Virus record (IMG/VR): IMGVR_UViG_3300023181_000025
Coordinates: 62,001-126,000 of that record
DNA length: 64,000 nucleotides
Reading direction: 5' to 3' (one strand)
In this document: one piece after another, positions 3,626-56,475 of the stretch
How the letters are laid out: the number at the start of each line of letters is the position of its first letter
Numbering within the stretch: the first letter of the stretch is position 1
Notes under the pieces: generated by a model
Told to the model about the DNA's origin: nothing
The model's database searches: none
The model's input: only the letters and a program-made list of their open reading frames with translations
Program-made: the position numbers and the translations under genes

Positions 3626-4690
3626 TTATCCTAAATCACCAAAACTATCGAAATCTCCAGCTTCAATTGTGGTATCCATGGCACCTACTTCATACCTGTA
3701 ATTTTCAGTTTCTTGATTTGCTACTTGAATCTTAGAAGTATCGGAAAAAGTTCCAAGCCAGCCCCCAATAGGATTATTTTTTTGGTCAAATATTTTTTTG
3801 AATCCGAGCGATACCAAACGATTATTAGCAAGCCATTCAATATATCCTTTGAGTAAACTAGCATTAAACCCAATTAATTCGCCTTGGGAAAATAAATAAT
3901 CCGCCCAAGCTTTTTCATTTTCAACAGTCAATGCAAACAAATCATATACTTTCTGTTCGTTATCCTTCATTATTTGCTGGAAGCCTTCAAGAGGATCTTG
4001 TTTCCAAAACTTCATAATATTTTGAGTTATAGCAACATGAAGAGCTTCGTCGCGTTCAATTAATTGAATTATTGACCCGTTACCCACTAGTTTGCCGCGA
4101 TATTTAAAATACAGTGTGCAAGCGAACGATATGTAAAACGATAGACTTTCGGTGATGTAGGTCGCCAAAACAGCATCAAAAATTTCTTGCTTAATATTTT
4201 TTGGCTCCCCTAAAAGTTTGTCGTAAGAATTCTTTGCAAATTCCATTCGAGAGACAATTTCTTTATCTTCTAGAATAGAATCAAAAAACTGCTTTGGATT
4301 TTTTGTAATATTTTGCAATACCCATGTATAGGACCGAGAGTGAATAGTCTCGTAAAATGCCCATGTTGCACAACAAATTTCAAGTTCTGGGCTAGTTATA
4401 TAACTAGAAACTTCGTGAATACTTCTTGAAAGCATCGAATCTGTTGATGTTTGCCAACGAAGATTATTCTCGAAAATAAACTTTTCCGTAGAATTAAGAG
4501 ACTCATAATCCATGCGGTCCTTTGTAAGATTTATTTCGTCATGCTTCCAAAAGTTTTTGATTTGCTTATCTGTTAACTCAATAAAAATAGGCCTTTTGAC
4601 TAAATCATACCTTTGTAACCCAAGCGACTCCCCCAAAAACATTGGGTTCGCCATGATATCATAATTTTTTGTGTTTAAAACTGTTTTCAT
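3626..4690 (-). CDS. nrdB: ribonucleotide reductase class Ia beta subunit
   Basis: FW...EI.L.KD, ETIHSRSY, FY.SFAC, IERDEALH, QVANQETE; start moved to ATG 4690 just after nrdA stop. Confidence 0.95.
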   Translation of the reverse strand: MKTVLNTKNYDIMANPMFLGESLGLQRYDLVKRPIFIELTDKQIKNFWKHDEINLTKDRMDYESLNSTEKFIFENNLRWQTSTDSMLSRSIHEVSSYITSPELEICCATWAFYETIHSRSYTWVLQNITKNPKQFFDSILEDKEIVSRMEFAKNSYDKLLGEPKNIKQEIFDAVLATYITESLSFYISFACTLYFKYRGKLVGNGSIIQLIERDEALHVAITQNIMKFWKQDPLEGFQQIMKDNEQKVYDLFALTVENEKAWADYLFSQGELIGFNASLLKGYIEWLANNRLVSLGFKKIFDQKNNPIGGWLGTFSDTSKIQVANQETENYRYEVGAMDTTIEAGDFDSFGDLG

Positions 4691-4692
4691 AT

Positions 4693-6939
4693 TTAAATTG
4701 CACATGCTCCTGAAGCGCATCCGTCATCTTCCTTATTGGACATCCCCTCAGAGTTATGTCCGTCATCTTTTTTGGCGTAATACAGTGTTTTTGCGCCTAG
4801 CTTAAACGATAAAAGAATATCGGAGAGAACTCTTTTTACGGTAAGTTTTTCTTTTGAGTAGAAATGGTCAGCAGAAATAGACATATCACAATATTTTTGA
4901 ATTACTGCATAAATCTTAATAAGATTAGTATTATCAGGCATTTCAAAACAACCTTCATAATTCCAGTTTTTGTTTCCGGGCACAAATTGCTTAATAAGAC
5001 CTTGTTTGGATTCTTTTATTTGGAATCTTGATTGAATTGGTCCGACGCCATTTGTTGAGTTGAGGCAAACAGAAGATGCTTCGCATGGCATCATAGCGGT
5101 TAAGGTCATATTGCGCAAGCCCCAAGTTAGGATTTCTTTCCTGAGCCATTCCCAATCCATAGAAAGCGTCCTGTTGCAAACTTCATCCACAGTTTTTTTA
5201 TAACTGTCGATAGGTAGAATTCCATCGGAATAGCTGCTTTCACTAAATAAGGGTGCTGGACCTCTTTCTTTCGCCAAATTCATAGACGCTTTTAGACAAT
5301 AAAATTGAATCTTCTCCATTAATGCATCTACAAATGCAACAGATTCTGGATCTGAGTATTTTAAGTTATTTTTTGCTAATAAAGCCGCTAAGTTGGTTAT
5401 ACCAATCCCAAGGGATCTTTTATTAACTGCGAAGTTTCTGGCTTGTGGGGCAAAGTAATCTTGAATATCTAAAATATTGTCAAGCTGTCTCACGCTGGTT
5501 TCGCAAATTTCTTCTAATTCCTCATCACTTTTCGCTTCTAAAACATTGATAGCGCAAAGCGTGCAAATTCCAATTTCCCCATCCAAATCATAAAGATTTT
5601 TTGTTGGTGTGATATTCTGCAAAATTTCCTGACACAGATTTGAAAATCCAACCTTTTTCTTCCATGGGCTATGGTTGTTTGCATTATCAATATTTAATAT
5701 ATATATTCTTCCGGTTTCAATTCTTTCCTCGGCTAGGCGAGTAAACAGTTCGTTAGCACTTACTGTTTTTTTCATTTTAATCATTGGGTCGTTTTCGTAA
5801 CGAATATAAAGATCATCGAATTCTGGCAAACCGAAAGCTTCGAATAAGCCTTTTACTTCATTGGGGTTGAAAAGAGTAATGTTTCCGTTCTTAATTAATC
5901 TTTCATAAAAAAGCTTCGAAATCCCTATGCTATAATCCAAGCGCCTTACTCGGTTGGCATCTGTTCCTCTATTATTTTTAAGTTGAAGGATGTCCTCAAT
6001 CTCGTAATGCCAAATTGGGAAGGTTGTGGTGGCACTTCCTCCGCGCGCCCCTTGGAGGGTAGCAATAACGATAGATTCAAATGTTTTCAAATAAGGAATT
6101 ACACCTGTATGTAAAACTTGTCCGCCCCGTATAGGGGAGCCAATTGGGCGCAAACTGCCCGTATCTAGGCCAATTCCATATCCTTTTGAAGTCGCTTGAG
6201 ACGTGAAAACTCGTGATGCGTCAATAGACTCTAAAGTATCCAAAACAGGTAGAAGGCAACAAGACGCATATGATCTTGTATTTGTTCTAAGTTTTGACAT
6301 TAATGGAGAGGGCAAACTTATTTTTCTCTTTGTATAGGAATCATAGGCTCTTTTCACATAAAAAACTCTTTTTTCCGGACTTTCATTAATATGACCGGCC
6401 ATTGCCATTAACATGTATGCAAATGAAGGCGTTTCAAATGATTCTCCTGTTGATTTATTATTATAAAGGTATTTTTCCTTTAATTGTTTAACTGCCGCAG
6501 AATCTAATTGAAGATCTCTATCGTGGTGGATCTTTTCATTCAGTTTGTTAATTTCCTTTTGAGAAAAAACTTTTAAAATTTCTGGATCATAAATACCAAG
6601 ATCAATATTCTTTTTTATAAAATCATATAAATGTGGCGGATTTTTTCCTCCCCAAACCTCTTTTCTTAAAGAAAAGATCATTAATCTACCCGCGACTAGG
6701 CTATAATTGGGAGATGTTTCTGAAAATAAATCGCTGGCAGCGTCTATTATCGAACTATGGATGTCCTGGGAATTAATTTTCTTCGATAGACTCATATTGG
6801 CGTTAATAGCTATTAAATTAGCATCAACTCCACTAACCCCCTCTGTTGCCCAATTTATAACTTTATTTATTTTTTCAACGTCGAACAATTCTTGCGAGCC
6901 GTCTCGTTTTATTACTTTCACCTCTTCATTAATACTCAT
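4693..6939 (-). CDS. nrdA: ribonucleotide reductase class Ia alpha subunit with ATP cone
   Basis: VIKRDG ATP cone, ASCCL, SNLCQEI, KTLYY, C-terminal C..GAC. Confidence 0.96.
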   Translation of the reverse strand: MSINEEVKVIKRDGSQELFDVEKINKVINWATEGVSGVDANLIAINANMSLSKKINSQDIHSSIIDAASDLFSETSPNYSLVAGRLMIFSLRKEVWGGKNPPHLYDFIKKNIDLGIYDPEILKVFSQKEINKLNEKIHHDRDLQLDSAAVKQLKEKYLYNNKSTGESFETPSFAYMLMAMAGHINESPEKRVFYVKRAYDSYTKRKISLPSPLMSKLRTNTRSYASCCLLPVLDTLESIDASRVFTSQATSKGYGIGLDTGSLRPIGSPIRGGQVLHTGVIPYLKTFESIVIATLQGARGGSATTTFPIWHYEIEDILQLKNNRGTDANRVRRLDYSIGISKLFYERLIKNGNITLFNPNEVKGLFEAFGLPEFDDLYIRYENDPMIKMKKTVSANELFTRLAEERIETGRIYILNIDNANNHSPWKKKVGFSNLCQEILQNITPTKNLYDLDGEIGICTLCAINVLEAKSDEELEEICETSVRQLDNILDIQDYFAPQARNFAVNKRSLGIGITNLAALLAKNNLKYSDPESVAFVDALMEKIQFYCLKASMNLAKERGPAPLFSESSYSDGILPIDSYKKTVDEVCNRTLSMDWEWLRKEILTWGLRNMTLTAMMPCEASSVCLNSTNGVGPIQSRFQIKESKQGLIKQFVPGNKNWNYEGCFEMPDNTNLIKIYAVIQKYCDMSISADHFYSKEKLTVKRVLSDILLSFKLGAKTLYYAKKDDGHNSEGMSNKEDDGCASGACAI

Positions 6940-10548: not shown

Positions 10549-11068
10549 CACAAAATCATATTTGGTTGGGGCCATCCAGTATGAAAATGGACAGGCTTGG
10601 AGATCTGATTTTACAGACAAGCTTAATTCCATAGGGGTGAGGGTTTTGAACCCATATAATAATATATTTGTAAATAGCCCGGCTGAAGATATCACAGCCC
10701 ATGAGGATTTATATAAGTTGATGGATAGCGGTCAATTTGATAAGGTTCGTCAACATATGAAATTAATACGGAATTTGGATTTATCAGCCGTTGATAGAAG
10801 TGATTTCATTGTGGCTTATATTAATCCAAAAGTTCCCACAATAGGCTCCATAGAAGAGTTAACAGTAGCTTCAGCAATTAAGCGCGCCACCTTTATCATT
10901 ATTGAAGGTGGAATAAAAAAATGCCCCTTTTGGCTTCTTGCGATGTTTCCAACAAAGTATTTTTATAATTCATTTGGGGAAGCTTGGGAAACTATTTCAA
11001 AAATTGATTCGGGGGAAATAGAAATTGATTCCGATAGATGGAGATTATTGGTCGAGCACTTGAGATGA
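10532..11068 (+). CDS. nucleoside 2-deoxyribosyltransferase-like protein
   Basis: YL.GAI, WR, V.NP, DL..VD.SD.IVA, TIGS.EEL. Confidence 0.7.
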   Translation: MGKLNNTKSYLVGAIQYENGQAWRSDFTDKLNSIGVRVLNPYNNIFVNSPAEDITAHEDLYKLMDSGQFDKVRQHMKLIRNLDLSAVDRSDFIVAYINPKVPTIGSIEELTVASAIKRATFIIIEGGIKKCPFWLLAMFPTKYFYNSFGEAWETISKIDSGEIEIDSDRWRLLVEHLR

Positions 11069-17133: not shown

Positions 17134-17736
17134 ATGTTTTACGATTTTATAGAAGCAGGATTATATCAGTTTGAGTCGCTGTCAAAAAGGGGCGACCTGC
17201 AAAAGGGTATTGTTATTGAACCGATAACTGATATTATAAACAAAACAGAAGTAGGAAAATATGTTTTCAAAGAGAACTCTGCAATTGACGGAGAAAGCCG
17301 CATAGATCATAGATTTTATGTTGACGATGAATTGAGAATAAAATATGATCTCCCTTCTTGGATTTGTAGTTTGTCGTCTTTTACTCAAGTTCATCCTCTG
17401 GTTGAAAAAGAATTTAATCAAAGGGGCATTTTTCTTTCGGAGATTAAATTGAGGCAAGTGGATGTTGTTACTTGGGAAATTATATTTCAAAAATACAATG
17501 TTGTTGGAGTAAATGTATTGAAATTAAATAGTTTTAAAAGAGATTGTAAGATTCTTGAATTATTTCTTGACCAAGCAGAAAAGACAGCCATAGTTCTTCC
17601 GGAGAAGATAATTTATCATACTCTTTACGAAAAGGATATTAATTACGTCGAAAGCTCATACAAGAGACTAAAGGAACTAGGTTATAAGATAGAAATAATA
17701 GGGATAGAAACGATCGCAACCAAAAATGAAAATTAA
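17134..17736 (+). CDS. FkbM-like methyltransferase (divergent)
   Basis: YDFIE.G, GIVIEP, V..LK.....DC.IL. Confidence 0.5.
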   Translation: MFYDFIEAGLYQFESLSKRGDLQKGIVIEPITDIINKTEVGKYVFKENSAIDGESRIDHRFYVDDELRIKYDLPSWICSLSSFTQVHPLVEKEFNQRGIFLSEIKLRQVDVVTWEIIFQKYNVVGVNVLKLNSFKRDCKILELFLDQAEKTAIVLPEKIIYHTLYEKDINYVESSYKRLKELGYKIEIIGIETIATKNEN

Positions 17737-18412
17737 ATACTATACAGTAGGTGGGGCGATAAGGGACGAACTACTTGGAGTTAAAAGTAAAGATATTGAT
17801 TTTGCAGTAGAGGCTTCAAGCTATGAAGCGATGAGAGAGGATCTAATTTCCAAAGGTATTGAGATTTTTCAGGAGCGTCCCGATTTTTTTGCAATTAGAG
17901 GAAAGCATCCGAAATTGGGCGCGGTTGATTATACATTGTGTAGAAAAGAAGGATTTTATTCTGATGGACGTAGACCAGACAGTGTTACGATCTGTTCAAT
18001 TGAAGAAGAGCTTTCCAGAAGGGACTTTTCGATCAACTCGATGGCCAAAAATGAAGAAGGAATTTTAATTGACCCATTTGATGGGGCGCGGGATTTAGAA
18101 AATAATCTTTTGAGATGTGTTGGTAGTTCTTACGAAAGATTTTCCGAAGATTCCCTTCGATTAATTAGAGCTATTCGATTTTTCATAACCAGAGGGTTTC
18201 GCCTTCATGAGGACATATGTTATTGTTTGAGAGATGAATTTCTTTTGGAAAAAATTAAAAATATTTCAATTGAAAGAATCTATGAAGAGTTGACAAAGTG
18301 TTTCGCTTATGATAGCTTTGCGACACTTCAGTTTTTCAGAGAATATCGTAAGTTGGAAAAGGTTGTTTTTGAAGACATCGGATTAAAATTGACACCAAAA
18401 ATAATCAAGTAG
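17726..18412 (+). CDS. cca: tRNA nucleotidyltransferase (class II CCA-adding, short form)
   Basis: VGGAIRD.LLG...KDIDF, RRDFSINSMA, DPFDG..DL, EDSLRLIRAIRF, ERIYEEL. Confidence 0.9.
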   Translation: MKIKYYTVGGAIRDELLGVKSKDIDFAVEASSYEAMREDLISKGIEIFQERPDFFAIRGKHPKLGAVDYTLCRKEGFYSDGRRPDSVTICSIEEELSRRDFSINSMAKNEEGILIDPFDGARDLENNLLRCVGSSYERFSEDSLRLIRAIRFFITRGFRLHEDICYCLRDEFLLEKIKNISIERIYEELTKCFAYDSFATLQFFREYRKLEKVVFEDIGLKLTPKIIK

Positions 18413-19637: not shown

Positions 19638-19708
19638 CGCGCATTCGTCTAATGGTAAGATGCCTCAAAAACATGGGGTGAAAGGTGATTCGATTTCATC
19701 GTGCGCAA
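19638..19708 (+). ncRNA. tRNA-like RNA, 6-nt A-rich loop without U33
   Basis: GCGCAT/GTGCGC, D-arm with TGGTA, TTCGATT; CCTCA-AAAACA-TGGGG. Confidence 0.65.
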
Positions 19709-19714
19709 CATAAT

Positions 19715-19804
19715 TCCCATCGGGCTGGCTAGAGAAGGCTCTCGACTGTTAATCGAGTGGCACCGAATTAAGTAGGTGGCTAGGGGCGGAACCTAGGATG
19801 GGAG
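19715..19804 (+). tRNA. tRNA-Asn(GTT) with long variable arm
   Basis: TCCCATC/GATGGGA, CTCGA-CTGTTAA-TCGAG, atypical T-loop. Confidence 0.75.
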
Positions 19805-19854
19805 CAAATATTTCTTGACTTATCCAATAAATCAGGTAATATACAAAAAGATTA

Positions 19855-19932
19855 GCGGGAATAGCTCAATGTAGAGCGCGACTTGGTTTTAAAAATCCCG
19901 TCGAGGCAGCGGTTCAAACCCGTTTTCCCGCA
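19855..19932 (+). ncRNA. tRNA-like RNA with enlarged anticodon arm
   Basis: GCGGGAA/TTCCCGC, normal D/T arms, CGAC-17 nt-GTCG. Confidence 0.7.
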
Positions 19933-19936
19933 CAAA

Positions 19937-20014
19937 AACTCGGTCGTCTAATAAAAATTAGGGCACCACTCATCGGTAGTGGAAATAAAGGTGAAAGGCC
20001 TTTCCGGGTTGCCA
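19937..20014 (+). tRNA. atypical tRNA-Arg(TCG)-like, CCA encoded
   Basis: AACTCGG/CCGGGTT-G-CCA; CCACT-CATCGGT-AGTGG (A33). Confidence 0.6.
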
Positions 20015-20251: not shown

Positions 20252-20330
20252 GCGAGTATCACATAGAGGTCGATTGTGCCTAACTTCCAATTAGGAATAC
20301 CACGCGTGAGTTCGAATCTCACTACTCGCA
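20252..20330 (+). tRNA. tRNA-Gly(TCC)
   Basis: GCGAGTA/TACTCGC, CCTAA-CTTCCAA-TTAGG. Confidence 0.88.
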
Positions 20331-20549
20331 CATATTTATAATGAAAGAGCCAAATATTATAGTAAGATTGATTCTTTGTTTAATTTCTCCTATAAAATGG
20401 AGAGAAAGGCTGGTTTTAGGCAAGTGTTTTGTTATATTATATAGAGAAAGTAGAAACGATAGTTTGGCCTTCGAGCTAAAAGACAGAATAAATGAGTTGT
20501 GGGAAAAAGAATACGAAAAATGGTGGAAGTTTAAAGCGAAATATTTTTA

Positions 20550-20661
20550 GCCTTCGAAGCAGACGGTTCGATTCCGTCGCCTAGAGATAGGTCCATGGAT
20601 GGTATAAAGCTTACGGTGACATGGTTTGACTCCATATCGGGTTCAATTCCCGACGAAGGCT
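20550..20661 (+). ncRNA. tRNA-like RNA with two T-arm hairpins
   Basis: GCCTTCG/CGAAGGC; GACGG-TTCGATT-CCGTC at D position and TCGGG-TTCAATT-CCCGA at T position. Confidence 0.65.
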
Positions 20662-20669
20662 CAGTAATA

Positions 20670-20761
20670 GGGTAACTAACTCAAGCGGTCTTGAGACTCG
20701 CCTTGAAAGCGATGAGTTCCAGTAAACATTCTGGAATGGGGATCGACACCTCAGTTGCCCG
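20670..20761 (+). tRNA. tRNA-Ser(TGA)
   Basis: loop CTTGAAA, long variable arm, G73. Confidence 0.88.
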
Positions 20762-20862
20762 CTTTTGTGGTTAGGCATTTGTTTCATATTGGTTTGAGGG
20801 TAGTCCCTCCGCAGTCGAAAGCGTTATCATGCCACCTCGCCAATTTATTGGCGAGGGTGAAT

Positions 20863-20947
20863 GGGTTGTAAATCGGACAGGCGTGCCGAGCTTTGTTGCT
20901 AACAAAAGGGACCGGAAACGGTTGGATTTCGAATATTCTGCAACCCG
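20863..20947 (+). tRNA. tRNA-Ser(GCT)
   Basis: loop TTGCTAA, long variable arm ACCG-GAAA-CGGT. Confidence 0.82.
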
Positions 20948-21006
20948 CACGGAAATTTATAAATAAGATTTCCAAAAATTGTCACAGATAAATAAAATAT
21001 TAATTA

Positions 21007-21341: not shown

Positions 21342-22118
21342 TTATTTGATTTCCGCTTTTCTAGTGTCTAAACCCTGTTGAAATAGCCTTGATTCAGCCT
21401 CTCGTCTTAACCATAGGCCTTTTAGCTTTTCTCTTGACCACAGCCTTCTCATGCTCAATATGTCACTAGGAACATTTTCCACTTTATCATTAGCGATATT
21501 ATACTTAATCCATCTCATTTCTTTTCGCGAATCCGTATTAGCTAGCGATGGGCCTCGATTAAAAACTAGCGAGGTTAAAGCTCCGTTAGAATGCGGATGC
21601 AATGTTGTGGGGGCAAGAGAGAACGCATCTTTTGTTTGCTTGGTGAAAACCGGCATGGTATAATTAGTAAATACTTTTTCGGCTTGATTGTAATCAAACC
21701 TTAATAAATTTCTAACCTTTGGAAGGCCATTATAATATGCGTTTTTCCCGGTCATTCCAGACACAGACTGCATCAATTGTATTTCTTTTTCTGTTGCTAC
21801 GCCTGTAAAAGCTTTACGTATTTGATCTTTAGTCATCATCCCTAAGTCATTCCCAATGCATACAGTTACTCCCGATGAGGTTGTTTGCCAAGCAGGAACC
21901 GTTGGTCTGGTTAGATACTTGTCATAGTATTCTCTAGTTCCAGATTCATAATAAATTATCAAATCAACGCTTTTTTGAGAAACTGGGAGCGATAAACCTT
22001 CGCTAATAACGTCATTAGGGCCAGCAAATGCCAGCCCCATAAACGCTACTAATAATAGTAATGTTTTTTTAATTAATTTCAAAGTATCCCACATTTTCCA
22101 TTTTGAATTTAGAAGCAC
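21342..22118 (-). CDS. lysozyme-fold endolysin with signal peptide (true start probably ~22071-22094)
   Basis: LIIYYESG, SGVT..IG.DLG, AL.SLVFNRG, GL..RREAE..LF; KKTLLLLVAFMGLAFA. Confidence 0.8.
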   Translation of the reverse strand: MLLNSKWKMWDTLKLIKKTLLLLVAFMGLAFAGPNDVISEGLSLPVSQKSVDLIIYYESGTREYYDKYLTRPTVPAWQTTSSGVTVCIGNDLGMMTKDQIRKAFTGVATEKEIQLMQSVSGMTGKNAYYNGLPKVRNLLRFDYNQAEKVFTNYTMPVFTKQTKDAFSLAPTTLHPHSNGALTSLVFNRGPSLANTDSRKEMRWIKYNIANDKVENVPSDILSMRRLWSREKLKGLWLRREAESRLFQQGLDTRKAEIK

Positions 22119-23007
22119 TATAGTTATTTTTTGTTTTTAGAAGTATTTTCAAACCCTTTCTTTCCCAATACCTTAAATAATTAGAAAGCGTGGAATTTTC
22201 AGGATAATTGCCAAATTTTGCCTTTATAAAAGATTTAACGTTTATTATATAATATAATTTGTTTTCATAGTTTACAACATACCTAGGTCCATATTTGCAT
22301 TTTAACTTTTTTATAGAATTTATTCTTTTTTGCTTTGATTCTTCAGTATGATTTCTGCCATAAAATGGATTATTTTTACCTTCATAAATCCCAAGCTTTT
22401 TTTCGCGCATTATTATTTTGTCTTTTTTTGTATGTTTATAGCCCTTTGCCGGAGGAGTCACTTCCCCGGATTTAATTTTTTCTACATATTTAATTAGACT
22501 TTGTCGGCTTTTTTCTTTTGATTCTGGAGTTATTTTAGATAAATTATTTATGCTGGTCGCTATAGCCTTTTTACTGTTTTCACCGGTGTAAAAAGCTTTG
22601 AGTTTAAGTGATATTTTTTCTTTTGTAGAGACGCTTCTATGCTTTTCGAATAACTTAAAATCAGTTGGATCATTAAGAATATTGAAACCAAAATCTGGGA
22701 AAGAAGATTGGTAGAAATCTATCCAAAATTTTTCCATTTTAAGTAGATTCTCATATGTATAATTTTTTGCCCATTCTAATATTTCGATTATAAATTCTTC
22801 ATGTCCGAATTTATTCCAATAGTTTTGAAGATGTGCGTTGCCATGTAACTTTTTATTTAGTTGCTGAATATGCTCTTTTAACCTCCTAGATACATTAACT
22901 GAACTTCCTATATAAATTTTACCCGTAGGTATATGAGTTATTGAATAAATAGCCTTTTCATTTTTGTTGTATAACCCATAGCTTTTTATTAATTCTGTAG
23001 CTGTCAT
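22069..23007 (-). CDS. GIY-YIG homing endonuclease with NUMOD3-like repeats
   Basis: AIYSI....GKIYIGSS...RRL.EH; GYKHT, NPFYGRNHTEESK. Confidence 0.9.
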   Translation of the reverse strand: MTATELIKSYGLYNKNEKAIYSITHIPTGKIYIGSSVNVSRRLKEHIQQLNKKLHGNAHLQNYWNKFGHEEFIIEILEWAKNYTYENLLKMEKFWIDFYQSSFPDFGFNILNDPTDFKLFEKHRSVSTKEKISLKLKAFYTGENSKKAIATSINNLSKITPESKEKSRQSLIKYVEKIKSGEVTPPAKGYKHTKKDKIIMREKKLGIYEGKNNPFYGRNHTEESKQKRINSIKKLKCKYGPRYVVNYENKLYYIINVKSFIKAKFGNYPENSTLSNYLRYWERKGLKILLKTKNNYSASKFKMENVGYFEIN

Positions 23008-26936: not shown

Positions 26937-27551
26937 ATGAAAGGTAAAATCCTAAAGCTCAATAAATACTATTTCCCCGTTTCAGTTTCTGATTATAAAG
27001 AAATTATAAAAAATATATTTAGCGAGGCAGTATACCCTATTGATATTGTATACGAATTAAACGAAGACGGATCTCCAAATATGGAGGAAATCGCCTATTT
27101 TCAACCAATTAAGACTTGGGATGAATGGTCTAAGTTAGAAATCCGCGATTTCGATGAGTCCATTAAAGGCGTCAAAGGTTCTTATAGAATGCCGTCTGTT
27201 GTAATTTGCGCTGACTACAGCAAGATTAAATGGAACAAAGTGGTCTTTCCGACGAAACAAAATATTTGGCAAAGAGACAACTATATTTGCCAATATACTG
27301 GAAAAAAATTAAATAAAGAAACCGTTACTGTTGACCATATTGTCCCAAAATCAAGGGGCGGAAAAGATTGTTGGTTTAATCTTGTTGCGGCGGACAGAGA
27401 AGTCAATAGGGTTAAAGCCGACAGAACTCCAGAGGAATGCGGACTTAAATTAATTAGACAGCCTTTTATTCCAAAAACAAACGCACTTTCTCTCACTTTT
27501 TTAGAAGCTCGTCCAGAATGGACCAAATTTATTCCAGAAAAAACAATGTAA
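26937..27551 (+). CDS. HNH endonuclease (McrA-like)
   Basis: NI..RD.Y.CQYTG, TVDHIVPKSRGG...W.NLV, N..KADRTPEE. Confidence 0.9.
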   Translation: MKGKILKLNKYYFPVSVSDYKEIIKNIFSEAVYPIDIVYELNEDGSPNMEEIAYFQPIKTWDEWSKLEIRDFDESIKGVKGSYRMPSVVICADYSKIKWNKVVFPTKQNIWQRDNYICQYTGKKLNKETVTVDHIVPKSRGGKDCWFNLVAADREVNRVKADRTPEECGLKLIRQPFIPKTNALSLTFLEARPEWTKFIPEKTM

Positions 27552-29898: not shown

Positions 29899-29972
29899 GC
29901 GCCGTTAGCTCAGCGGTTAGAGCGGTCCGACTCTAAATTGGATTGTCGGGGTTTCGAATACCTCACGGCGCA
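29899..29972 (+). tRNA. amber suppressor tRNA (anticodon CTA)
   Basis: GCGCCGT/ACGGCGC, canonical D/T arms, TCCGA-CTCTAAA-TTGGA. Confidence 0.88.
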
Positions 29973-30185
29973 CTTTTGACTTAAAAGAAAACATGGTGAC
30001 TAAATGATTATTGTCATGGTTAAGCTAGAAAATACTGCTAGCAGATTATTTAGAGTGATGCGATAGCTTAGCAAGCTGAGATTATTCAAGGGTTGACAAC
30101 AGTTGCCTGATAATCTCAAATATCTAAAGAAAGTTAAAATATTTTCACTTTTTTCTTCCAAAATCTAAACTTTTAGTGTAAATAT

Positions 30186-30362
30186 ATGAAGCCAAAAATG
30201 ATTACAAGAGTTACAGCAACAGAATTTGAAACCGATGATGGAGTTATCCATGATATTCCGTTTGAATTAGATGAAGTTCCAACAGTTGAGGATTTTCAAC
30301 GAATCTATGACGAATGGTTCAGATTATTTCAACAGAAAGGATTGATAGACAAAAATGGATAA
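30186..30362 (+). CDS. 58-aa acidic protein at IS left end (absent from ORF track)
   Basis: MKPKMITRVTATEFETDDG...; stop overlaps tnpA start. Confidence 0.6.
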   Translation: MKPKMITRVTATEFETDDGVIHDIPFELDEVPTVEDFQRIYDEWFRLFQQKGLIDKNG

Positions 30363-30987
30363 AAAGATTCTATCAATTAGTGATGCTGCATCTATCTTAG
30401 GCGTTTCTGATGAAACTCTTAGAAATTGGGAAAGAGAAGGCAAAGTGATCCCATTTCATACGGAAGGTGGCCATAGACGCTATTATAGAACCGATATTGA
30501 GAAGTTGGCAGGAATCTATGTAGAAACTGTTAAAGAGTCTAGTGGTAAGCGTGTGGGTATCTATTGCCGTGTTAGCTCACATGAGCAGAAGACCAAAGGT
30601 GATTTAGAAAGACAGGTTGGCAGAATGACTACAGAGGCACTAAAACGTGGTTATTCTATTGTTGCGGTTTTTGATGAGGTAGGTTCAGGAATGAACGACA
30701 ATAGGAAGAAATTACAGAAACTTTTTGAATTGGTTGAGAAGAAAGAAATTGATGTAGTCTTAATCGAACATAAAGATAGATTGTCAAGGTTTTGTTTTAA
30801 TTATCTATTATCTTATTTTAATTCCTATGGGGTTAGAATTGAAAAAGTTGAAGAGGTAATGAGTAAGAGTTTCGAGAATGAACTCGTAGAAGATATTTTG
30901 TCTTTGATGGCTAGTTTTTCTGCTAAAATCTATGGACGTAGAAGTTCGCAGAATCGAAAGAAGAAAGAAAAGGAGGAACCAGAATGA
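30355..30987 (+). CDS. tnpA: IS607 serine-recombinase transposase
   Basis: MerR HTH (TLRNWE.EGK, GGHRRY), YCRVSS..QK.DL.RQ, KDRLSRF, ELVED, FSAKIYGRRS. Confidence 0.95.
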   Translation: MDKKILSISDAASILGVSDETLRNWEREGKVIPFHTEGGHRRYYRTDIEKLAGIYVETVKESSGKRVGIYCRVSSHEQKTKGDLERQVGRMTTEALKRGYSIVAVFDEVGSGMNDNRKKLQKLFELVEKKEIDVVLIEHKDRLSRFCFNYLLSYFNSYGVRIEKVEEVMSKSFENELVEDILSLMASFSAKIYGRRSSQNRKKKEKEEPE

Positions 30988-31691
30988 GACAGGAAATTTT
31001 ATATGGCGACTGTTTAGAGCTATTAAAAAACATTCCTGATAAATCAATTGATTTCATTTGTATTGACCCGCCATACGGTTTAACCGCTCCGAAATGGGAT
31101 TCTATTGTTTCTTTTGATTTTTTATGGGCTGAATTTAATAGAATTGGCAAAAATGGATATGTCGCGGCTATATTTGGCTGTCAACCATTCACTACGAAAG
31201 TTATTTGCTCTAATATAGAACAATTTAAATATTGTTGGTATTGGAATAAAAACCAAGGAACAAATTTCTTTCATGCCAAGAGAATGCCAATTAGAAAAGT
31301 TGAAGAAATATCTATTTTTGGCGGCAAAACATATAATCCACAAATTACGGATGGGCATATTCCTACCAATTCTGCTAAAGGCTGCTCCAACGGAAAAGCA
31401 TATCATGGAACCAATACGCGAAATTACGAAGGTGGGAAAACAACGCGATTTCCTGACAATATTTTAAATTTTAAATGCGTGGATAATTATTCGAGAGTTC
31501 ATTCCAGTCAAAAACCAGTTGAGCTTTTGGAGTATCTTATCAATACATATACTAATGAGAATGATGTTGTTTTGGATAGCTTTGCTGGTTCAGGCTCAAC
31601 TTTAGTAGCGGCAAAAAATCTCAATCGTCAATTCATAGGTATCGAAAAAGAAAAAGAATATTATTATATTTGTTTAGAAAGATTGAAATGA
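30984..31691 (+). CDS. N6-adenine/N4-cytosine DNA methyltransferase (beta class)
   Basis: DPPY precedes H..QKP..LL and VLDSFAGSGST. Confidence 0.92.
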   Translation: MRQEILYGDCLELLKNIPDKSIDFICIDPPYGLTAPKWDSIVSFDFLWAEFNRIGKNGYVAAIFGCQPFTTKVICSNIEQFKYCWYWNKNQGTNFFHAKRMPIRKVEEISIFGGKTYNPQITDGHIPTNSAKGCSNGKAYHGTNTRNYEGGKTTRFPDNILNFKCVDNYSRVHSSQKPVELLEYLINTYTNENDVVLDSFAGSGSTLVAAKNLNRQFIGIEKEKEYYYICLERLK

Positions 31692-32908
31692 TTTTACGCG
31701 CATACAAAACCGAGATTAGTGTTAATAACAAGCAACAAACCTTGTTATTGCAACATATCGGTTGTGCAAGATGGGCATATAATTGGGCATTAGCTAAAAA
31801 GAAAGAACAATTCGATAAAAAAGAAAAGATTCCTAATGCTATTGAACTTCATAGGGAATTAAACAAGTTAAAACAGTCGGAAGTTCCTTGGATGTATAAT
31901 TCAAGTAAGACTTCTCCACAAAATGCACTTAGAGATTGCGATAAGGCATTTCAAAATTTTTTCGCTCGTTGTAAGAGAAAAGTCAAAGGCAAGAAAGGAT
32001 TTCCTAAATTTAAATCCAAAAAGAACGAAAAACAGTCGTTTAGATTAGACGGAGCAATTTCAGTAGAGTCTGATTGTATTAAATTGCCACGAATCGGTAA
32101 ACTTAGATTAGCCGAGAAAGATTATATTCCCACTGATTGTAAAATACTATCTGCTACCGTCTCTAAACGAGCGGACAAATGGTTTATATCTATTCAAGTA
32201 GAAACGCCTGACAGAGAGCATCTTGACGCTAAGAACGAGGTAGTAGGAATTGATTTGGGAATTAAAACTTTGGCTACTTGTTCTGATGGAGCCATTTATG
32301 AAAATCCAAAAGCCTTAAAGAAAAATCTTAAAAGACTAAAACGTAAACAAAAACAATTAAGCAGAAAGAACAAGGGAATCAAAAACTATGGAAAAGTAAA
32401 ACAAAAATTAGCAAAATTACATTATCACATATCAAACATTCGTAAAGATTGCTTACATAAAATCACTTCTAAAATTATAGACGAAAACCAAGTCGTAGTT
32501 TTGGAAGATTTGAAAGTAAGCAATATGATGAAAAATCACTGTTTGGCGCAAGCTATCAGTGATGTTGGATTATTTGAATTTCGTCGTCAGATAGAATATA
32601 AAGCAAAATGGAATGGAAGAAAAGTTATCTTCGCGGATACCTTCTTTGCTTCCAGTAAGACTTGTAGCTGTTGCGGATGGAAAAATTCAGATTTGAAGTT
32701 GACAGATAGAATATTTGACTGTAAGATGTGTGATAATAAAATGGATAGAGATTTAAATGCAAGTTTGAATCTAAAACAAATTTATAGGGAAAGTTCTTCC
32801 CGAATTGACGCTTCTGGAGATGGGAGTTCATCAAACGCAAGTTTGGTTAGCCCGTCGTTGAACGAAGAATTTAACAAAAAATCGAGAGTTTATGTCCTAA
32901 AAAGATGA
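31688..32908 (+). CDS. tnpB: RNA-guided endonuclease TnpB
   Basis: RuvC GIDLG / VLEDL / DRDLNA intact; SSKTCSCCG...C..C zinc ribbon. Confidence 0.95.
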   Translation: MILRAYKTEISVNNKQQTLLLQHIGCARWAYNWALAKKKEQFDKKEKIPNAIELHRELNKLKQSEVPWMYNSSKTSPQNALRDCDKAFQNFFARCKRKVKGKKGFPKFKSKKNEKQSFRLDGAISVESDCIKLPRIGKLRLAEKDYIPTDCKILSATVSKRADKWFISIQVETPDREHLDAKNEVVGIDLGIKTLATCSDGAIYENPKALKKNLKRLKRKQKQLSRKNKGIKNYGKVKQKLAKLHYHISNIRKDCLHKITSKIIDENQVVVLEDLKVSNMMKNHCLAQAISDVGLFEFRRQIEYKAKWNGRKVIFADTFFASSKTCSCCGWKNSDLKLTDRIFDCKMCDNKMDRDLNASLNLKQIYRESSSRIDASGDGSSSNASLVSPSLNEEFNKKSRVYVLKR

Positions 32909-34127: not shown

Positions 34128-34199
34128 TTTAATGTAATATAAGATAGCATCCCCTGCAATTGTGGCGGGGTTGTTCTGGTTCAAATCCAGACATTAAAT
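34128..34199 (+). ncRNA. tRNA-like RNA with non-canonical anticodon loop
   Basis: TTTAATG/CATTAAA, TCTGG-TTCAAAT-CCAGA, CCTGC-AATTGTG-GCGGG. Confidence 0.6.
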
Positions 34200-34922: not shown

Positions 34923-34974
34923 CTTTAAAACATTTTTCTGAGTTCGAATCTCAGGTTGTCTATAGGAATAAAAA

Positions 34975-55403: not shown

Positions 55404-55461
55404 AAAAATAAACATTTTGAAGTTGCGGAAATTATAAGAGTCTTTGTTGATAAAAATATTT

Positions 55462-56475
55462 ATGAAATTATTAACACGCGACCAGTTTAGAGAAGGGTGT
55501 CTTGAAAGAGACAGTCATAAGTGCGTTATTTGTGGAGAAACGAAAAATCTTTCTGTCCATCATATTATAGAGCGGCGGTTATTCTCTGATGGCGGATACT
55601 ATCTTTCTAATGGATCTACACTTTGTGAGCCTCATCATATTCAGGCGGAAAAAACAGAGTTAAGTTGCGAAATAATTAGAGAGGCTTGTAATATTACGAA
55701 AATATGCTTGCCTGAAGATTATTACCCCGACCATCAATACACGAAATGGGGAGACGTTATATTGCCAAATAAACAGCGCATGAAAGGACCGCTTTTTTAC
55801 GATGAAAGCGTTCAAAAGATTCTTAAAGATCATTTTTCGCTTTATACGGATTACGTTAAGTATCCTAGATCATGGCATCTTTTATGGAGTCAAGGGAAAA
55901 CAAAGGATGACCGGGTTCTTCCCGATTGCTCTCAATTTGAAGGTAAGGAAATTGTTGTAACCGAGAAACTTGACGGGGAAAATACAAGTATCTACCACGA
56001 TTATATTCATGCCCGTTCTATTGACGGTCGAAACCATTGGAGCCGTGATTGGGTAAAAAATCTACAGGCTAGGGTTGGGTATCAGCTTGATCCCGGCTGG
56101 AGGATTTGCGGCGAAAATCTTTTTGCCAAACATTCCATTGGTTATGATAATCTGAAATCGTTTTTTTATGTGTTTAGCATCTGGAACGACAGGAATGAAT
56201 GCCTTAGTTGGGATGAAACGGTCGAGTATTGCTCTATATTAGAGCTTCAACACGTCCCGGTGCTATACCGGGGACTATGGGACGAAAGAAAGGTCAAAGC
56301 CCTTTATGATGAATCTAAACGCGAAACGATGGAGGGATATGTTGTAAGAATCGCGGACGGATTCAAATATGGAGAATTTAATAAATCATTGGCTAAGTTT
56401 GTGCGCAAGGACCACATAAACCCAGATAGCCATCATTGGTTCTTCACGGCTAGTGAAAAAAACAAATTACAATAA
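55462..56475 (+). CDS. HNH-fused RNA ligase
   Basis: RD..CVIC...HHI.ER; KYPR..HL, TEKLDGEN, GEN..AKHSI, EG.V.R. Confidence 0.88.
   Translation: MKLLTRDQFREGCLERDSHKCVICGETKNLSVHHIIERRLFSDGGYYLSNGSTLCEPHHIQAEKTELSCEIIREACNITKICLPEDYYPDHQYTKWGDVILPNKQRMKGPLFYDESVQKILKDHFSLYTDYVKYPRSWHLLWSQGKTKDDRVLPDCSQFEGKEIVVTEKLDGENTSIYHDYIHARSIDGRNHWSRDWVKNLQARVGYQLDPGWRICGENLFAKHSIGYDNLKSFFYVFSIWNDRNECLSWDETVEYCSILELQHVPVLYRGLWDERKVKALYDESKRETMEGYVVRIADGFKYGEFNKSLAKFVRKDHINPDSHHWFFTASEKNKLQ

What the first reader, a model, noticed from the sequence alone, without database searches (positions are those of the whole stretch)
20550..20661. tRNA-like RNA carrying two T-arms
Seen: a perfect 7-bp acceptor encloses a canonical T-hairpin GACGG-TTCGATT-CCGTC where the D-arm should be, two more small hairpins (GCCTA/TAGGT, ATGG/CCAT) and a second T-arm. 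Known: paired T-loops form the tRNA-elbow-binding platform of RNase P, T-box leaders and the L1 stalk. Inference: either a chimera of two tRNA 3' halves or an RNA that binds or mimics tRNA elbows.
Basis: partly seen in the sequence, partly recalled or inferred. Interest (0 to 1): 0.65.

Follow-up and report, generated by a model that had tools for sequence, protein, structure and literature searches.

The report
Conserved tRNA-like RNA with extra T-arms
A 112-base gene in a giant phage's tRNA cluster has the acceptor stem and T-arm of a tRNA but carries two extra T-loop hairpins and no anticodon arm. A second phage-like contig encodes the same RNA with matching compensatory base changes, so it is a conserved small RNA of unknown role, not a recombination scar.

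Summary
A perfect 7-bp acceptor stem encloses a canonical T-hairpin five bases after the stem, a GAGA-capped hairpin, an ATGG/CCAT hairpin whose loop is itself T-loop-like, and a normal T-arm stacked on the acceptor.

ARAGORN at default settings and Rfam do not call it. The window is part of a 211-kb phage from leaf litter with about 25 tRNA or tRNA-like genes.

A metagenome scan found one true homologue, L040:492-611 (identical in L057), directly after tRNA-Pro in another tRNA array. A model built from the window sequence alone scores it 68.7 bits. All 26 base pairs are kept, and nine changed on both sides, with at least one such pair in each of the five helices. Loops and linkers are better conserved than stems. 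This rules out a recent scar.

It cannot fold as a decoding cloverleaf. Its T-loops (UUCGA, UUUGA, UUCAA) are tRNA-type and do not fit the AGNNA/UGNNA elbow-docking module.

Most likely it is a non-decoding tRNA mimic, cut out by tRNA-processing enzymes. Its function is unknown. The closest analogues are T4 RNAC/RNAD and the irregular "E-loop" tRNAs from forest soil.

The family is rare: two lineages, and absent from six related phage arrays.

The parts
20550..20556 (+). Acceptor stem, 5' strand (GCCTTCG). Pairs 1-3 (G-C, C-G, C-G) are identical in the homologue; pairs 4-6 covary.
20557..20561 (+). Linker AAGCA. AAGC (positions 8-11) is identical in the homologue. Position 8 is A, not the U8 of tRNAs. 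G10-C11 can pair with G60-C61 like the outer two pairs of a D-stem (inference; no covariation).
   Evidence: direct reading
20562..20578 (+). T1: extra T-arm hairpin GACGG-TTCGATT-CCGTC where a D-arm would start. The loop is identical in the homologue, and two stem pairs changed on both sides.
20579..20592 (+). Hairpin 2: GCCTA-GAGA-TAGGT. In the homologue it is a 6-bp hairpin with a 9-nt loop at the same place. Two pairs changed on both sides.
20593..20620 (+). Central strand of 28 nt, D-loop-like, with two GG doublets, then AGCTT and the fully conserved block ACGGTGAC. The homologue folds part of it into a D-arm-like hairpin (stem GUGGU/GCUAC); the window copy does so only weakly.
20621..20635 (+). 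T3: hairpin ATGG-TTTGACT-CCAT, with a T-loop-like loop (U at the C56 position). It lies one base 5' of the T-arm, the place of a type-II variable arm. One pair changed on both sides (U-A to C-G).
20637..20653 (+). T2: canonical T-arm TCGGG-TTCAATT-CCCGA stacked on the acceptor. The outermost pair covaries (U-A to C-G), which supports a 7/5 arrangement rather than 8/4.
20654..20661 (+). Acceptor 3' strand CGAAGGC plus discriminator T. No encoded CCA here; the homologue reads TCCA.
20341..20550 (+). Upstream 69-aa ORF with no family match. Its TAG stop overlaps base 1 of the RNA, so 5' processing of the RNA would also make the 3' end of this mRNA.
20670..20762 (+). Next gene 8 nt downstream: an irregular 93-nt tRNA-Ser(UGA)-like gene with an 8-bp acceptor and 4-bp T-stem. 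It shows that the element sits as one unit in a tRNA array.
17726..18412 (+). Phage-encoded tRNA nucleotidyltransferase head domain (PolyA_pol) inside the same array. It is a candidate enzyme for adding CCA to array products that lack an encoded CCA.

Best explanation
The element is a gene for a conserved, tRNA-derived small RNA of about 112-120 nt that belongs to phage tRNA arrays.

Shown: it folds into a multi-helix junction. A 7-bp acceptor stem is stacked on a canonical 5-bp T-arm (T2). Two extra T-loop hairpins (T1 and T3), one variable hairpin, and a conserved D-loop-like strand holding two GG doublets and the invariant block ACGGUGAC complete it. It has no anticodon arm of tRNA geometry.

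Inferred: the acceptor/T-arm minihelix is the substrate module of RNase P, the 3' trimming enzymes and the CCA-adding enzyme. The RNA is therefore cut out of the polycistronic array transcript with tRNA-like ends, and the phage's own nucleotidyltransferase may add CCA.

Inferred, less sure: it is not a decoder. It copies the upper half of a tRNA (acceptor, T-arm, elbow), possibly with more than one elbow-like surface.

Speculative: it acts by occupying or titrating factors that read that half, such as T-arm modification enzymes, processing enzymes, a synthetase that reads G1-C72/C2-G71/C3-G70/U73, or host tRNA-targeting defence nucleases.

My odds: conserved structured RNA 0.9; processed like a tRNA 0.7; non-decoding mimic 0.5; any one named target 0.2 or less.
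For: - Anatomy is as described.
- The T-arm motif is essentially confined to tRNA-like genes in this genome.
- The homologue L040:492-611 (identical in L057) was found by a T-loop pattern scan of metagenome contigs. A covariance model built from the window sequence alone scores it 68.7 bits, E 2e-16, full length. Every other locus scores 16.8 bits or less.
- All 26 pairs are standard in both sequences, and 9 changed on both sides: acceptor 3, T1 2, hairpin 2 2, T3 1, T2 1. Slid controls give 0-2.
- RNAalifold returns the same five helices. The minimum-energy fold of L040 alone gives them too.
- Unpaired columns are 75% identical and paired columns 62%. Each T-loop keeps its own arm-specific sequence.
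- Both copies sit as single units within 8 nt of a tRNA gene in a tRNA array, on the tRNA strand.
- The flanking coding DNA of L040 shows no similarity to this phage.
- The phage encodes a nucleotidyltransferase head domain in the array and two RNA ligases.
- No cloverleaf fits: ARAGORN at default settings and Rfam do not call it.
Against: - Only two lineages are known, so covariation rests on one pairwise comparison, and the counted alignment was fitted to the structure.
- There are no expression data. Only three DNA runs hold the locus.
- Six related phage tRNA arrays (lysozyme 60-69% identical) lack it, so it is dispensable in that clade.
- For the window copy, folding energy favours a hairpin that excludes T3 by 2.5 kcal/mol.
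- Fold z-scores are modest: -2.9 and -1.5.
- The mimic or decoy function is inference from anatomy and gene neighbourhood only.
Confidence: 0.62

Rival explanations
1. It is a tRNA pseudogene or recombination scar: pieces of two or three tRNA genes fused during turnover of the array, with no function of their own.
For: The array holds several decayed or irregular tRNA-like genes and lone T-arm remnants at 34175-34191 and 34938-34954. Related phages have canonical arrays without the element. Homing endonuclease genes lie in and near the array, at 22069-23007 and 26937-27551.
Against: A homologue in an otherwise dissimilar contig keeps every helix with nine two-sided compensatory changes and no broken pair. 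Non-tRNA segments (AAGC, ACGGUGAC) are conserved, and stems vary more than loops. All helices of the window copy are perfect.
Confidence: 0.06
2. It is an unusual but working tRNA that is charged and decodes. Either the UUUGAYU loop serves as an anticodon loop (UGA, serine codon UCA), or a short intron is removed.
For: - U33-like U and a conserved UGA triplet lie in the T3 loop of both copies.
- Acceptor pairs 1-3 and U73 are invariant and equal to those of this phage's tRNA-Thr.
- L040 encodes CCA.
- ARAGORN at an 80% threshold offers 'Ser(AGA) with a 28-nt intron'.
- Irregular tRNAs with an extra loop between acceptor and D-stem are known from forest soil (PMC5389517).
Against: - T3 has a 4-bp stem and a pyrimidine at position 37. 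It lies 1 nt from the T-arm and 10 nt from the D-like region, the reverse of tRNA connectors.
- Position 8 is A, not U.
- The low-threshold intron models differ completely between the two homologues: Ser AGA with a 28-nt intron against Val GAC with a 47-nt intron elsewhere.
- From general knowledge, short spliceosome-free tRNA introns need an archaeal or eukaryal endonuclease that is not expected here.
Confidence: 0.1
3. It is a cis-acting processing signal, as in tRNA punctuation or the MALAT1 mascRNA. Its only role is to be cut by RNase P and so separate the upstream ORF's mRNA from the downstream tRNAs.
For: The stop codon of ORF 20341-20550 overlaps G1. In L040 an ORF starts about 20 nt after the RNA. 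The weak Rfam similarity is to mascRNA (19.1 bits, below threshold).
Against: A plain tRNA or a bare minihelix would do this job. It does not explain selection on three further hairpins, arm-specific T-loops and an invariant single-stranded block.
Confidence: 0.1
4. It is a tRNA binder: two of its T-loops lock head to tail into the platform that docks tRNA elbows in RNase P, T-box leaders and the L1 stalk, so the RNA captures tRNAs.
For: Three T-loop motifs sit in one junction.
Against: The known module has invariant AGNNA...UGNNA pentamers, usually in internal or bulge loops (PMC3664808). Here the pentamers are UUCGA, UUUGA and UUCAA on ordinary T-arm hairpins, and GG doublets are available to fill them as in a tRNA elbow.
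Confidence: 0.07

Closest known systems
Phage T4 RNAC and RNAD (species 1 and 2 RNAs), NC_000866 70908-71171
   Same: These are small stable RNAs of 139 and 119 nt encoded inside a phage tRNA cluster, directly after a tRNA gene. RNAC ends in a canonical T-arm (CCGGG-UUCGAAU-CCCGG) followed by a strand that closes on the 5' end. Their function is still unknown (PMC3014915, PMC9697503).
   Different: There is no sequence or structure homology: model R2 gives 12.4 bits, E 0.05, on RNAC, driven by the T-arm only. RNAC has one T-arm and long irregular hairpins. It has no extra T-loops and no perfect 7-bp acceptor.
Irregular and allo-tRNAs of soil bacteria and phages, including '(8/4) tRNA1 with an E-loop' (Mukai et al. 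2017, PMC5389517)
   Same: These are tRNA-like genes in polycistrons from forest and peat soil with an extra loop between acceptor stem and D-stem, U73, possible five-stem junctions and doubtful use in translation. The window comes from leaf litter, and its neighbour 20670-20762 is an 8/4 Ser-like tRNA.
   Different: Those RNAs keep an anticodon arm and have an 8/4 or 9/3 acceptor branch. Here covariation supports 7/5, there is no anticodon arm, and the extra elements are T-loop hairpins.
tRNA-like domains without an anticodon arm: tmRNA, bacterial Y RNA (YrlA), mascRNA
   Same: All have an acceptor-like stem plus T-arm, are processed by tRNA enzymes, and do not decode.
   Different: No match to any of them at curated thresholds. 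The element has no tag reading frame, no Ro-binding stem, and three T-loops instead of one.
[quoted passage not shown]
   Same: Several T-loop motifs lie close together in one RNA.
   Different: The defining AGNNA...UGNNA pentamers are absent. The loops here are standard tRNA T-loops on 4-5 bp hairpins (and direct reading).
Canonical tRNA (Rfam RF00005)
   Same: A 7-bp acceptor directly stacked on a 5-bp T-arm with GTTCRANNC, a discriminator base, and placement in a tRNA array.
   Different: There is no D-arm at positions 10-25 and no anticodon arm, and position 8 is A. The length is 112 nt. ARAGORN and the Rfam tRNA model do not detect it.

Membership tests
tRNA (RF00005) | 7-bp acceptor stem contiguous with a 5-bp T-stem and a T-loop of TTCRANN type | tested here: met
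   Positions 20550-20556/20654-20660 and 20637-20653. The outer T-stem pair covaries.
tRNA (RF00005) | D-arm at positions 10-25 and U8 | tested here: not met
   Position 8 is A in both homologues, and a T-arm hairpin occupies positions 13-29.
tRNA (RF00005) | Anticodon arm: 5-bp stem, 7-nt loop with U33 and purine 37, 1 nt after the D-arm and at least 4 nt before the T-arm | tested here: not met
   The only candidate (T3) has 4 bp and Y37, and lies 1 nt from the T-arm.
tRNA (RF00005) | Score above the curated threshold of the family model or the ARAGORN default | tested here: not met
   No call at 20550-20661. At E up to 10 there is only a partial mascRNA-like match.
Intron-containing tRNA | The same exon cloverleaf, anticodon and intron position in homologues | tested here: not met
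   Window: Ser(AGA) with a 28-nt intron at 37/38. L040: Val(GAC) with a 47-nt intron at 28/29.
allo-tRNA (8/4 or 9/3) | 12-bp acceptor branch split 8/4 or 9/3, a long variable arm, and an anticodon arm | tested here: not met
   The fifth T-stem pair covaries (U-A to C-G), so the split is 7/5. The eighth 'acceptor pair' would be A-A. There is no anticodon arm.
E-loop irregular tRNA (Mukai 2017) | Extra loop between acceptor stem and D-stem, and U73 | tested here: inconclusive
   Extra hairpins at that position and U73 are present. The published sequences are not held, so homology could not be tested.
[quoted passage not shown] | Two T-loops with invariant AGNNA and UGNNA pentamers | tested here: not met
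   The pentamers are UUCGA, UUUGA and UUCAA in both homologues.
[quoted passage not shown] | Mutual intercalation of the two loops, forming a stacking platform | not testable with these tools
   This needs a 3D structure or chemical probing.
T4 RNAC/RNAD | Sequence and structure homology | tested here: not met
   Model R2 on the T4 locus, filters off: RNAC 12.4 bits, E 0.05, T-arm only; RNAD only a 2.5-bit partial match at E 8.6.
T4 RNAC/RNAD | Stable non-tRNA product encoded within a phage tRNA cluster, adjacent to a tRNA | tested here: inconclusive
   The location criterion is met. Stability and expression are untested, as there are no RNA runs.
tmRNA | tRNA-like ends enclosing a tag reading frame and pseudoknots | tested here: not met
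   ARAGORN finds no tmRNA, Rfam has no match, and 112 nt leaves no room for a frame.

The most novel reading that the evidence does not exclude
Phage tRNA arrays encode a so far undescribed class of multi-T-loop RNAs. This element, with three T-loops and two GG doublets, would fold into a tRNA upper half with two or more elbow-like faces. It would work as a multivalent decoy or adaptor for host or phage factors that recognise tRNA elbows and T-arms. One example would be soaking up tRNA-targeting defence nucleases or modification enzymes during infection.

A second family with two T-arms, seen in about ten other arrays, would be a relative in design.
Probability: 0.15. Interest if true: 0.85.

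Novelty: new variant of a known kind. Interest (0 to 1): 0.66.

Why it matters
Phage tRNA clusters have been known for fifty years to encode stable RNAs that are not tRNAs (T4 RNAC and RNAD), and nobody knows what they do.

This element is a structurally clearer case. It is a tRNA frame that has lost the decoding arm and gained two T-loop hairpins, and it is kept by selection in two unrelated-looking arrays. That gives a defined, small, testable RNA for asking what non-decoding tRNA look-alikes do in infection.

It also shows that tRNA finders and Rfam miss conserved tRNA-derived genes in phage arrays. A second such family turned up as by-catch.

The current interest in tRNA-targeting anti-phage defences, and in phage tRNAs as counter-measures, makes a decoy role worth testing.

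Tried and rejected
- **Known families.** ARAGORN at default settings, Rfam gathering thresholds and Rfam at E up to 10 gave nothing for the element.
- **Intron-containing tRNA.** The low-threshold ARAGORN models are inconsistent between the homologues, so I rejected this reading.
- **Near-identical relatives.** Two exact 19-mers and one 23-mer in IMG/VR gave none. The 19-mer that includes the T-loop hit only an unrelated two-T-hairpin RNA (L002/L003).
- **Synteny.** Lysozyme neighbours at 60-69% identity gave six independent related arrays (L004-L011). None has the element or any uncalled T-arm.
- **Origin of the parts.** Local alignment against 102 tRNAs of this phage and its relatives matched at T-arm level only.
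- **Flanking repeats as insertion scars.** The 12-mer TTTRGCCTTCGA repeat (20463 and 20546) is at chance level for a 2-kb region.
- **Read data.** Three leaf-litter DNA runs hold the locus, none of them RNA, and there are no variants inside the element.
- **More homologues.**
  - Conserved-block and T3-T2 geometry patterns in IMG/VR gave 0 hits.
  - GTDB genomes gave 8 hits, all chance matches in coding DNA.
  - BLAST against cultured phages gave only T-arm matches.
  - Models R1 and R2 on all loci held and on five whole virus records found only the window copy and L040/L057.
  - Proteins next to the L040 copy led to one distant contig without the RNA.
- **Homology to T4 RNAC/RNAD.** None found.
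- **TAG recoding.** This could have turned the region into coding sequence. Under code 11, ORFs of 100 aa or more already sum to about 88% of the genome length (overlaps included), so I named no other code.

Full report
**1. Setting**

The window is bases 62001-126000 of a 211,168-bp virus record rated complete. The same contig appears in the metagenome collection as L043, and the DNA comes from leaf-litter metagenomes. It is a large tailed phage, with ribonucleotide reductase, baseplate and tail-fibre proteins, a GH24 lysozyme, homing endonucleases and two RNA ligases. Under the standard code, ORFs of 100 aa or more sum to about 88% of the genome length, overlaps included.

Between about 16.5 and 36.3 kb of the window, ARAGORN tRNA genes, all on the + strand. 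Rfam adds two more. A tRNA nucleotidyltransferase head domain is encoded inside the array at 17726-18412. None of the tRNA genes I inspected encodes CCA.

**2.

| Part | Window coordinates | Sequence |
|---|---|---|
| Acceptor stem (7/7 paired) | 20550-20556 with 20654-20660 | GCCTTCG / CGAAGGC |
| Discriminator | 20661 | T |
| First T-hairpin (T1) | 20562-20578 | GACGG-TTCGATT-CCGTC |
| Hairpin 2 | 20579-20592 | GCCTA-GAGA-TAGGT |
| Third hairpin (T3) | 20621-20635 | ATGG-TTTGACT-CCAT |
| T-arm (T2) | 20637-20653 | TCGGG-TTCAATT-CCCGA |

T2 abuts the acceptor 3' strand with no spacer, as in a tRNA.

- The single-sequence fold is -40.2 kcal/mol, z = -2.9.
- A strict T-arm motif occurs 20 times on the + strand of the whole genome. 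Most of the other 18 lie in tRNA or tRNA-like genes, and only one occurs on the - strand. The extra T-hairpin is therefore not a chance hairpin.
- ARAGORN at default settings and Rfam do not call the element. The best Rfam match is a sub-threshold partial hit to mascRNA.

**3. First impression: a scar**

Several things pointed to decay.

- With a relaxed threshold, ARAGORN finds a run of irregular tRNA-like genes between 19566 and 21170.
- Lone T-arm remnants lie at 34175-34191 and 34938-34954.
- Homing endonuclease genes lie in and near the array, for example 22069-23007 and 26937-27551.
- Six independent related phage arrays, found through the neighbouring lysozyme at 60-69% identity, have canonical tRNAs in a similar order and no such element.
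- Exact-word scans of IMG/VR, BLAST against cultured phages, and the sequencing-run index found no close relative.

**4. The homologue**

I scanned the metagenome contigs with a pattern that asks only for three T-loop cores at the observed spacing. It returned 40 loci.

- Most were tandem repeats or pairs of normal tRNAs.
- One was the window's own contig.
- Two, L040 and L057, are 99.9% identical to each other and carry a 120-nt sequence with the same architecture, 8 nt after a tRNA-Pro gene in an array Ala-Asp-Pro.

Nothing else among 28 sources exceeds 16.8 bits.

Comparison of the two sequences gives the following.

- On the model-guided alignment, all 26 pairs are standard in both sequences.
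- Nine pairs changed on both sides: three in the acceptor, two in T1, two in hairpin 2, one in T3 and one in T2. Sliding the 3' partners by one to three columns leaves 0-2 such pairs and 38-55% pairing.
- RNAalifold predicts the same five helices.
- The minimum-energy fold of L040 on its own contains them as well, plus a D-arm-like hairpin.
- The T-stems are anchored by their invariant loops, and a structure-blind MAFFT alignment already aligns the acceptor, T3 and T2. The result does not depend on the fitted alignment.
- Overall identity is 69%. Unpaired columns are more conserved (75%) than paired ones (62%).
- Invariant parts are acceptor pairs 1-3, U73, AAGC at positions 8-11, the block ACGGUGAC, and each arm's own loop sequence (UUCGAUU, UUUGAYU, UUCAAYU).
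- The coding DNA around the L040 copy has no detectable similarity to this phage.

This is the signature of a structured RNA under selection, and it removes the recent-scar explanation.

**5. A correction to the single-sequence fold**

For the window copy, the energy model prefers CCAUG/CAUGG (44-48 with 71-75) over the ATGG/CCAT hairpin by 2.5 kcal/mol. That alternative is not available in L040, whereas ATGG/CCAT is kept through a U-A to C-G change.

Its loop, UUUGAYU, is a T-loop with U in place of C56, so the RNA has three T-loop hairpins.

**6. What it is not**

- *Not a cloverleaf.* Position 8 is A. A T-arm sits where the D-arm starts. The only 7-nt loop with a U33-like U (T3) has a 4-bp stem and a pyrimidine at position 37. 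It lies 1 nt from the T-arm and 10 nt from the D-like strand, which is the position of a type-II variable arm, not of an anticodon arm.
- *Not an intron-containing tRNA.* Low-threshold intron models are unrelated in the two homologues.
- *Not an allo-tRNA.* The fifth T-stem pair covaries, so the acceptor branch is 7/5.
- *Not the elbow-docking double T-loop module.* That module has invariant AGNNA...UGNNA pentamers (PMC3664808). Here the pentamers are UUCGA, UUUGA and UUCAA, as in tRNA T-loops.
- *Not tmRNA, Y RNA or mascRNA* by any model.
- *Not homologous to T4 RNAC or RNAD*.

**7. How it most likely works**

Shown: this is a conserved junction of acceptor, T1, hairpin 2, a D-loop-like strand with two GG doublets, T3 and T2.

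Inferred from established tRNA biology: the 12-bp acceptor/T-arm stack with a discriminator is the element read by RNase P, the 3' trimming enzymes and the CCA-adding enzyme. The RNA should therefore be excised from the array transcript like its neighbours. In the window, cleavage at G1 would also cut the upstream ORF's mRNA at its stop codon. L040 even encodes CCA after U73, but that could be chance.

Without an anticodon arm it cannot decode. I therefore favour a mimic of the upper half of a tRNA.

The T-loops are of the kind that accept G18/G19 of a D-loop, and the central strand offers two GG doublets in both homologues. More than one elbow-like face is possible, but this is inference only.

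The invariant acceptor end (G1-C72, C2-G71, C3-G70, U73) equals that of this phage's tRNA-Thr. That hints at a protein reading this end.

The phage's investment in tRNA maturation and repair (a nucleotidyltransferase and two RNA ligases) fits a conflict over tRNAs. A decoy for tRNA-targeting factors is a reasonable hypothesis but unproven.

**8. Comparison with what is known**

- The nearest characterised analogues are T4 RNAC and RNAD. They are stable RNAs in the T4 tRNA cluster, one of them with a terminal T-arm, and their roles are still unknown.
- The nearest described structural relatives are the irregular tRNAs of forest and peat soil with an extra loop between acceptor and D-stem, U73, and no activity in E. 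coli tests (PMC5389517, PMC7609411). I could not compare their sequences.
- The element differs from both in having extra T-loop hairpins and no anticodon arm.

**9. Rarity**

- One copy in this genome.
- Absent from six related arrays.
- No further hit in IMG/VR with four patterns.
- None in GTDB representative genomes: the 8 pattern hits are all chance matches in coding DNA.
- None in cultured phages.

The pattern scans need exact T-loop cores, so diverged members would be missed.

**10. By-catch**

The same scans showed a second, larger family of uncalled RNAs in phage-like tRNA arrays. It has about ten distinct members, each directly after a tRNA. Each has a D-arm-like hairpin, two tandem T-arm hairpins supported by covariation, and what looks like a covarying closing stem (read by eye from the MAFFT alignment; RNAalifold did not predict it). 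Rfam has no match for them.

A further 98-nt RNA with two UUCGAUU hairpins sits next to a deformylase gene in L002/L003.

T-arm duplication inside tRNA-like frames therefore seems to recur in phages.

**11. Verdict**

- The scar reading is rejected.
- The elbow-binding reading fails its motif test.
- The tRNA-mimic reading is the best fit but is untested.

It is a new, rare family of tRNA-derived small RNA, and its function is unknown.

Noticed in passing
L012:2150-2261(-), L014:4214-4315(+), L018:8155-8249(-), L026:3-97(-), L037:867-974(-), L038:1483-1594(-), L051:1723-1825(-), L056:1285-1388(+), L020:141-244(+), L023:7599-7707(-): A second, distinct family of unannotated RNAs of about 100 nt, each directly 3' of a normal tRNA in phage-like tRNA arrays. 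Each has a D-arm-like hairpin with GG in its loop and two tandem T-arm hairpins (7 of 11 predicted pairs covary). Read by eye from the alignment, a closing stem also appears to covary (e.g. GTCAAGT/ACTTGAC, GTTAAGT/ACTTAAC, GATCAG/CTGATC). No Rfam match.
   Followed up: partly
L002:524-624(-) and L003:1644-1745(-): A 98-nt RNA closed by an 8-12 bp terminal stem and containing two hairpins with the identical loop TTCGATT. It lies just upstream of a peptide deformylase gene in an unrelated viral contig. ARAGORN and Rfam do not call it.
   Followed up: partly
window 19638-19709, 19715-19805, 19855-19933, 19937-20014, 20670-20762, 20863-20948: A run of irregular tRNA-like genes that ARAGORN misses at default settings:
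- one with a 6-nt anticodon loop;
- an Asn(GTT) anticodon on a 91-nt long-variable-arm body with T-loop GGCGGAA;
- a 79-nt Leu(TAA)-like gene (Rfam 49.5 bits);
- an 8/4 Ser(TGA)-like gene, for which a 93%-identical copy with different flanks exists in another leaf-litter run;
- a Ser(GCT)-like gene.
   Followed up: partly
window 34175-34191 and 34938-34954: Two canonical T-arm hairpins (TCTGG-TTCAAAT-CCAGA and CTGAG-TTCGAAT-CTCAG) stand alone between tRNA genes without an acceptor stem. They may be tRNA gene remnants or processing signals.
   Followed up: no
window 29899-29973: A suppressor-type tRNA with anticodon CTA (labelled Pyl by ARAGORN). Related phages have one too (L009). Yet under the standard code ORFs of 100 aa or more sum to about 88% of the genome length, overlaps included, and TAG ends 21 of those 286 ORFs. 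There is no sign of TAG recoding.
   Followed up: partly
window 17726-18412; 55444-56475; 57927-59279: A tRNA nucleotidyltransferase head domain is encoded inside the tRNA array; relatives carry PolyA_pol plus HD genes near their arrays. Two RNA ligase genes are also present, one fused to an HNH motif. Together they form a tRNA maturation and repair tool kit.
   Followed up: partly
L005:7396-7482, L006:11371-11466 and 10837-10923, L009 (Arg CCG 88 nt, Pro 96 nt), L008 (Asn 89 nt), L011 (Glu 89 nt): Related phages encode tRNAs of 87-96 nt with long variable arms but anticodons of amino acids that normally use short-armed tRNAs (Trp, Pro, Lys, Arg, Asn, Glu).
   Followed up: no
window 20252-20331; L005:8981-9061; L009 second tRNA-Thr (81 nt; at 4735-4815 in reverse-complement coordinates of the locus): tRNA-Gly(TCC) of the window (80 nt) and an 81-nt tRNA-Thr(TGT) of related phages share a similar 10-11 nt variable-loop insert (AATACCACGC and TATTCCACACC).
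   Followed up: no
window 30355-32908: A serine resolvase with a MerR-type HTH, a DNA methylase and a transposase-family protein (phrog_506) lie in a row within the tRNA region. It looks like an IS607-like mobile element carrying a methylase.
   Followed up: no
L004:10935-11006(-) and L009 first tRNA-Thr (72 nt; at 4423-4494 in reverse-complement coordinates of the locus): The 72-nt tRNA-Thr(TGT) of two related phages has the acceptor strands GCCTTCA/TGTCGGC with two conserved central mismatches. Its 5' strand resembles that of the element (GCCTTCG).
   Followed up: no
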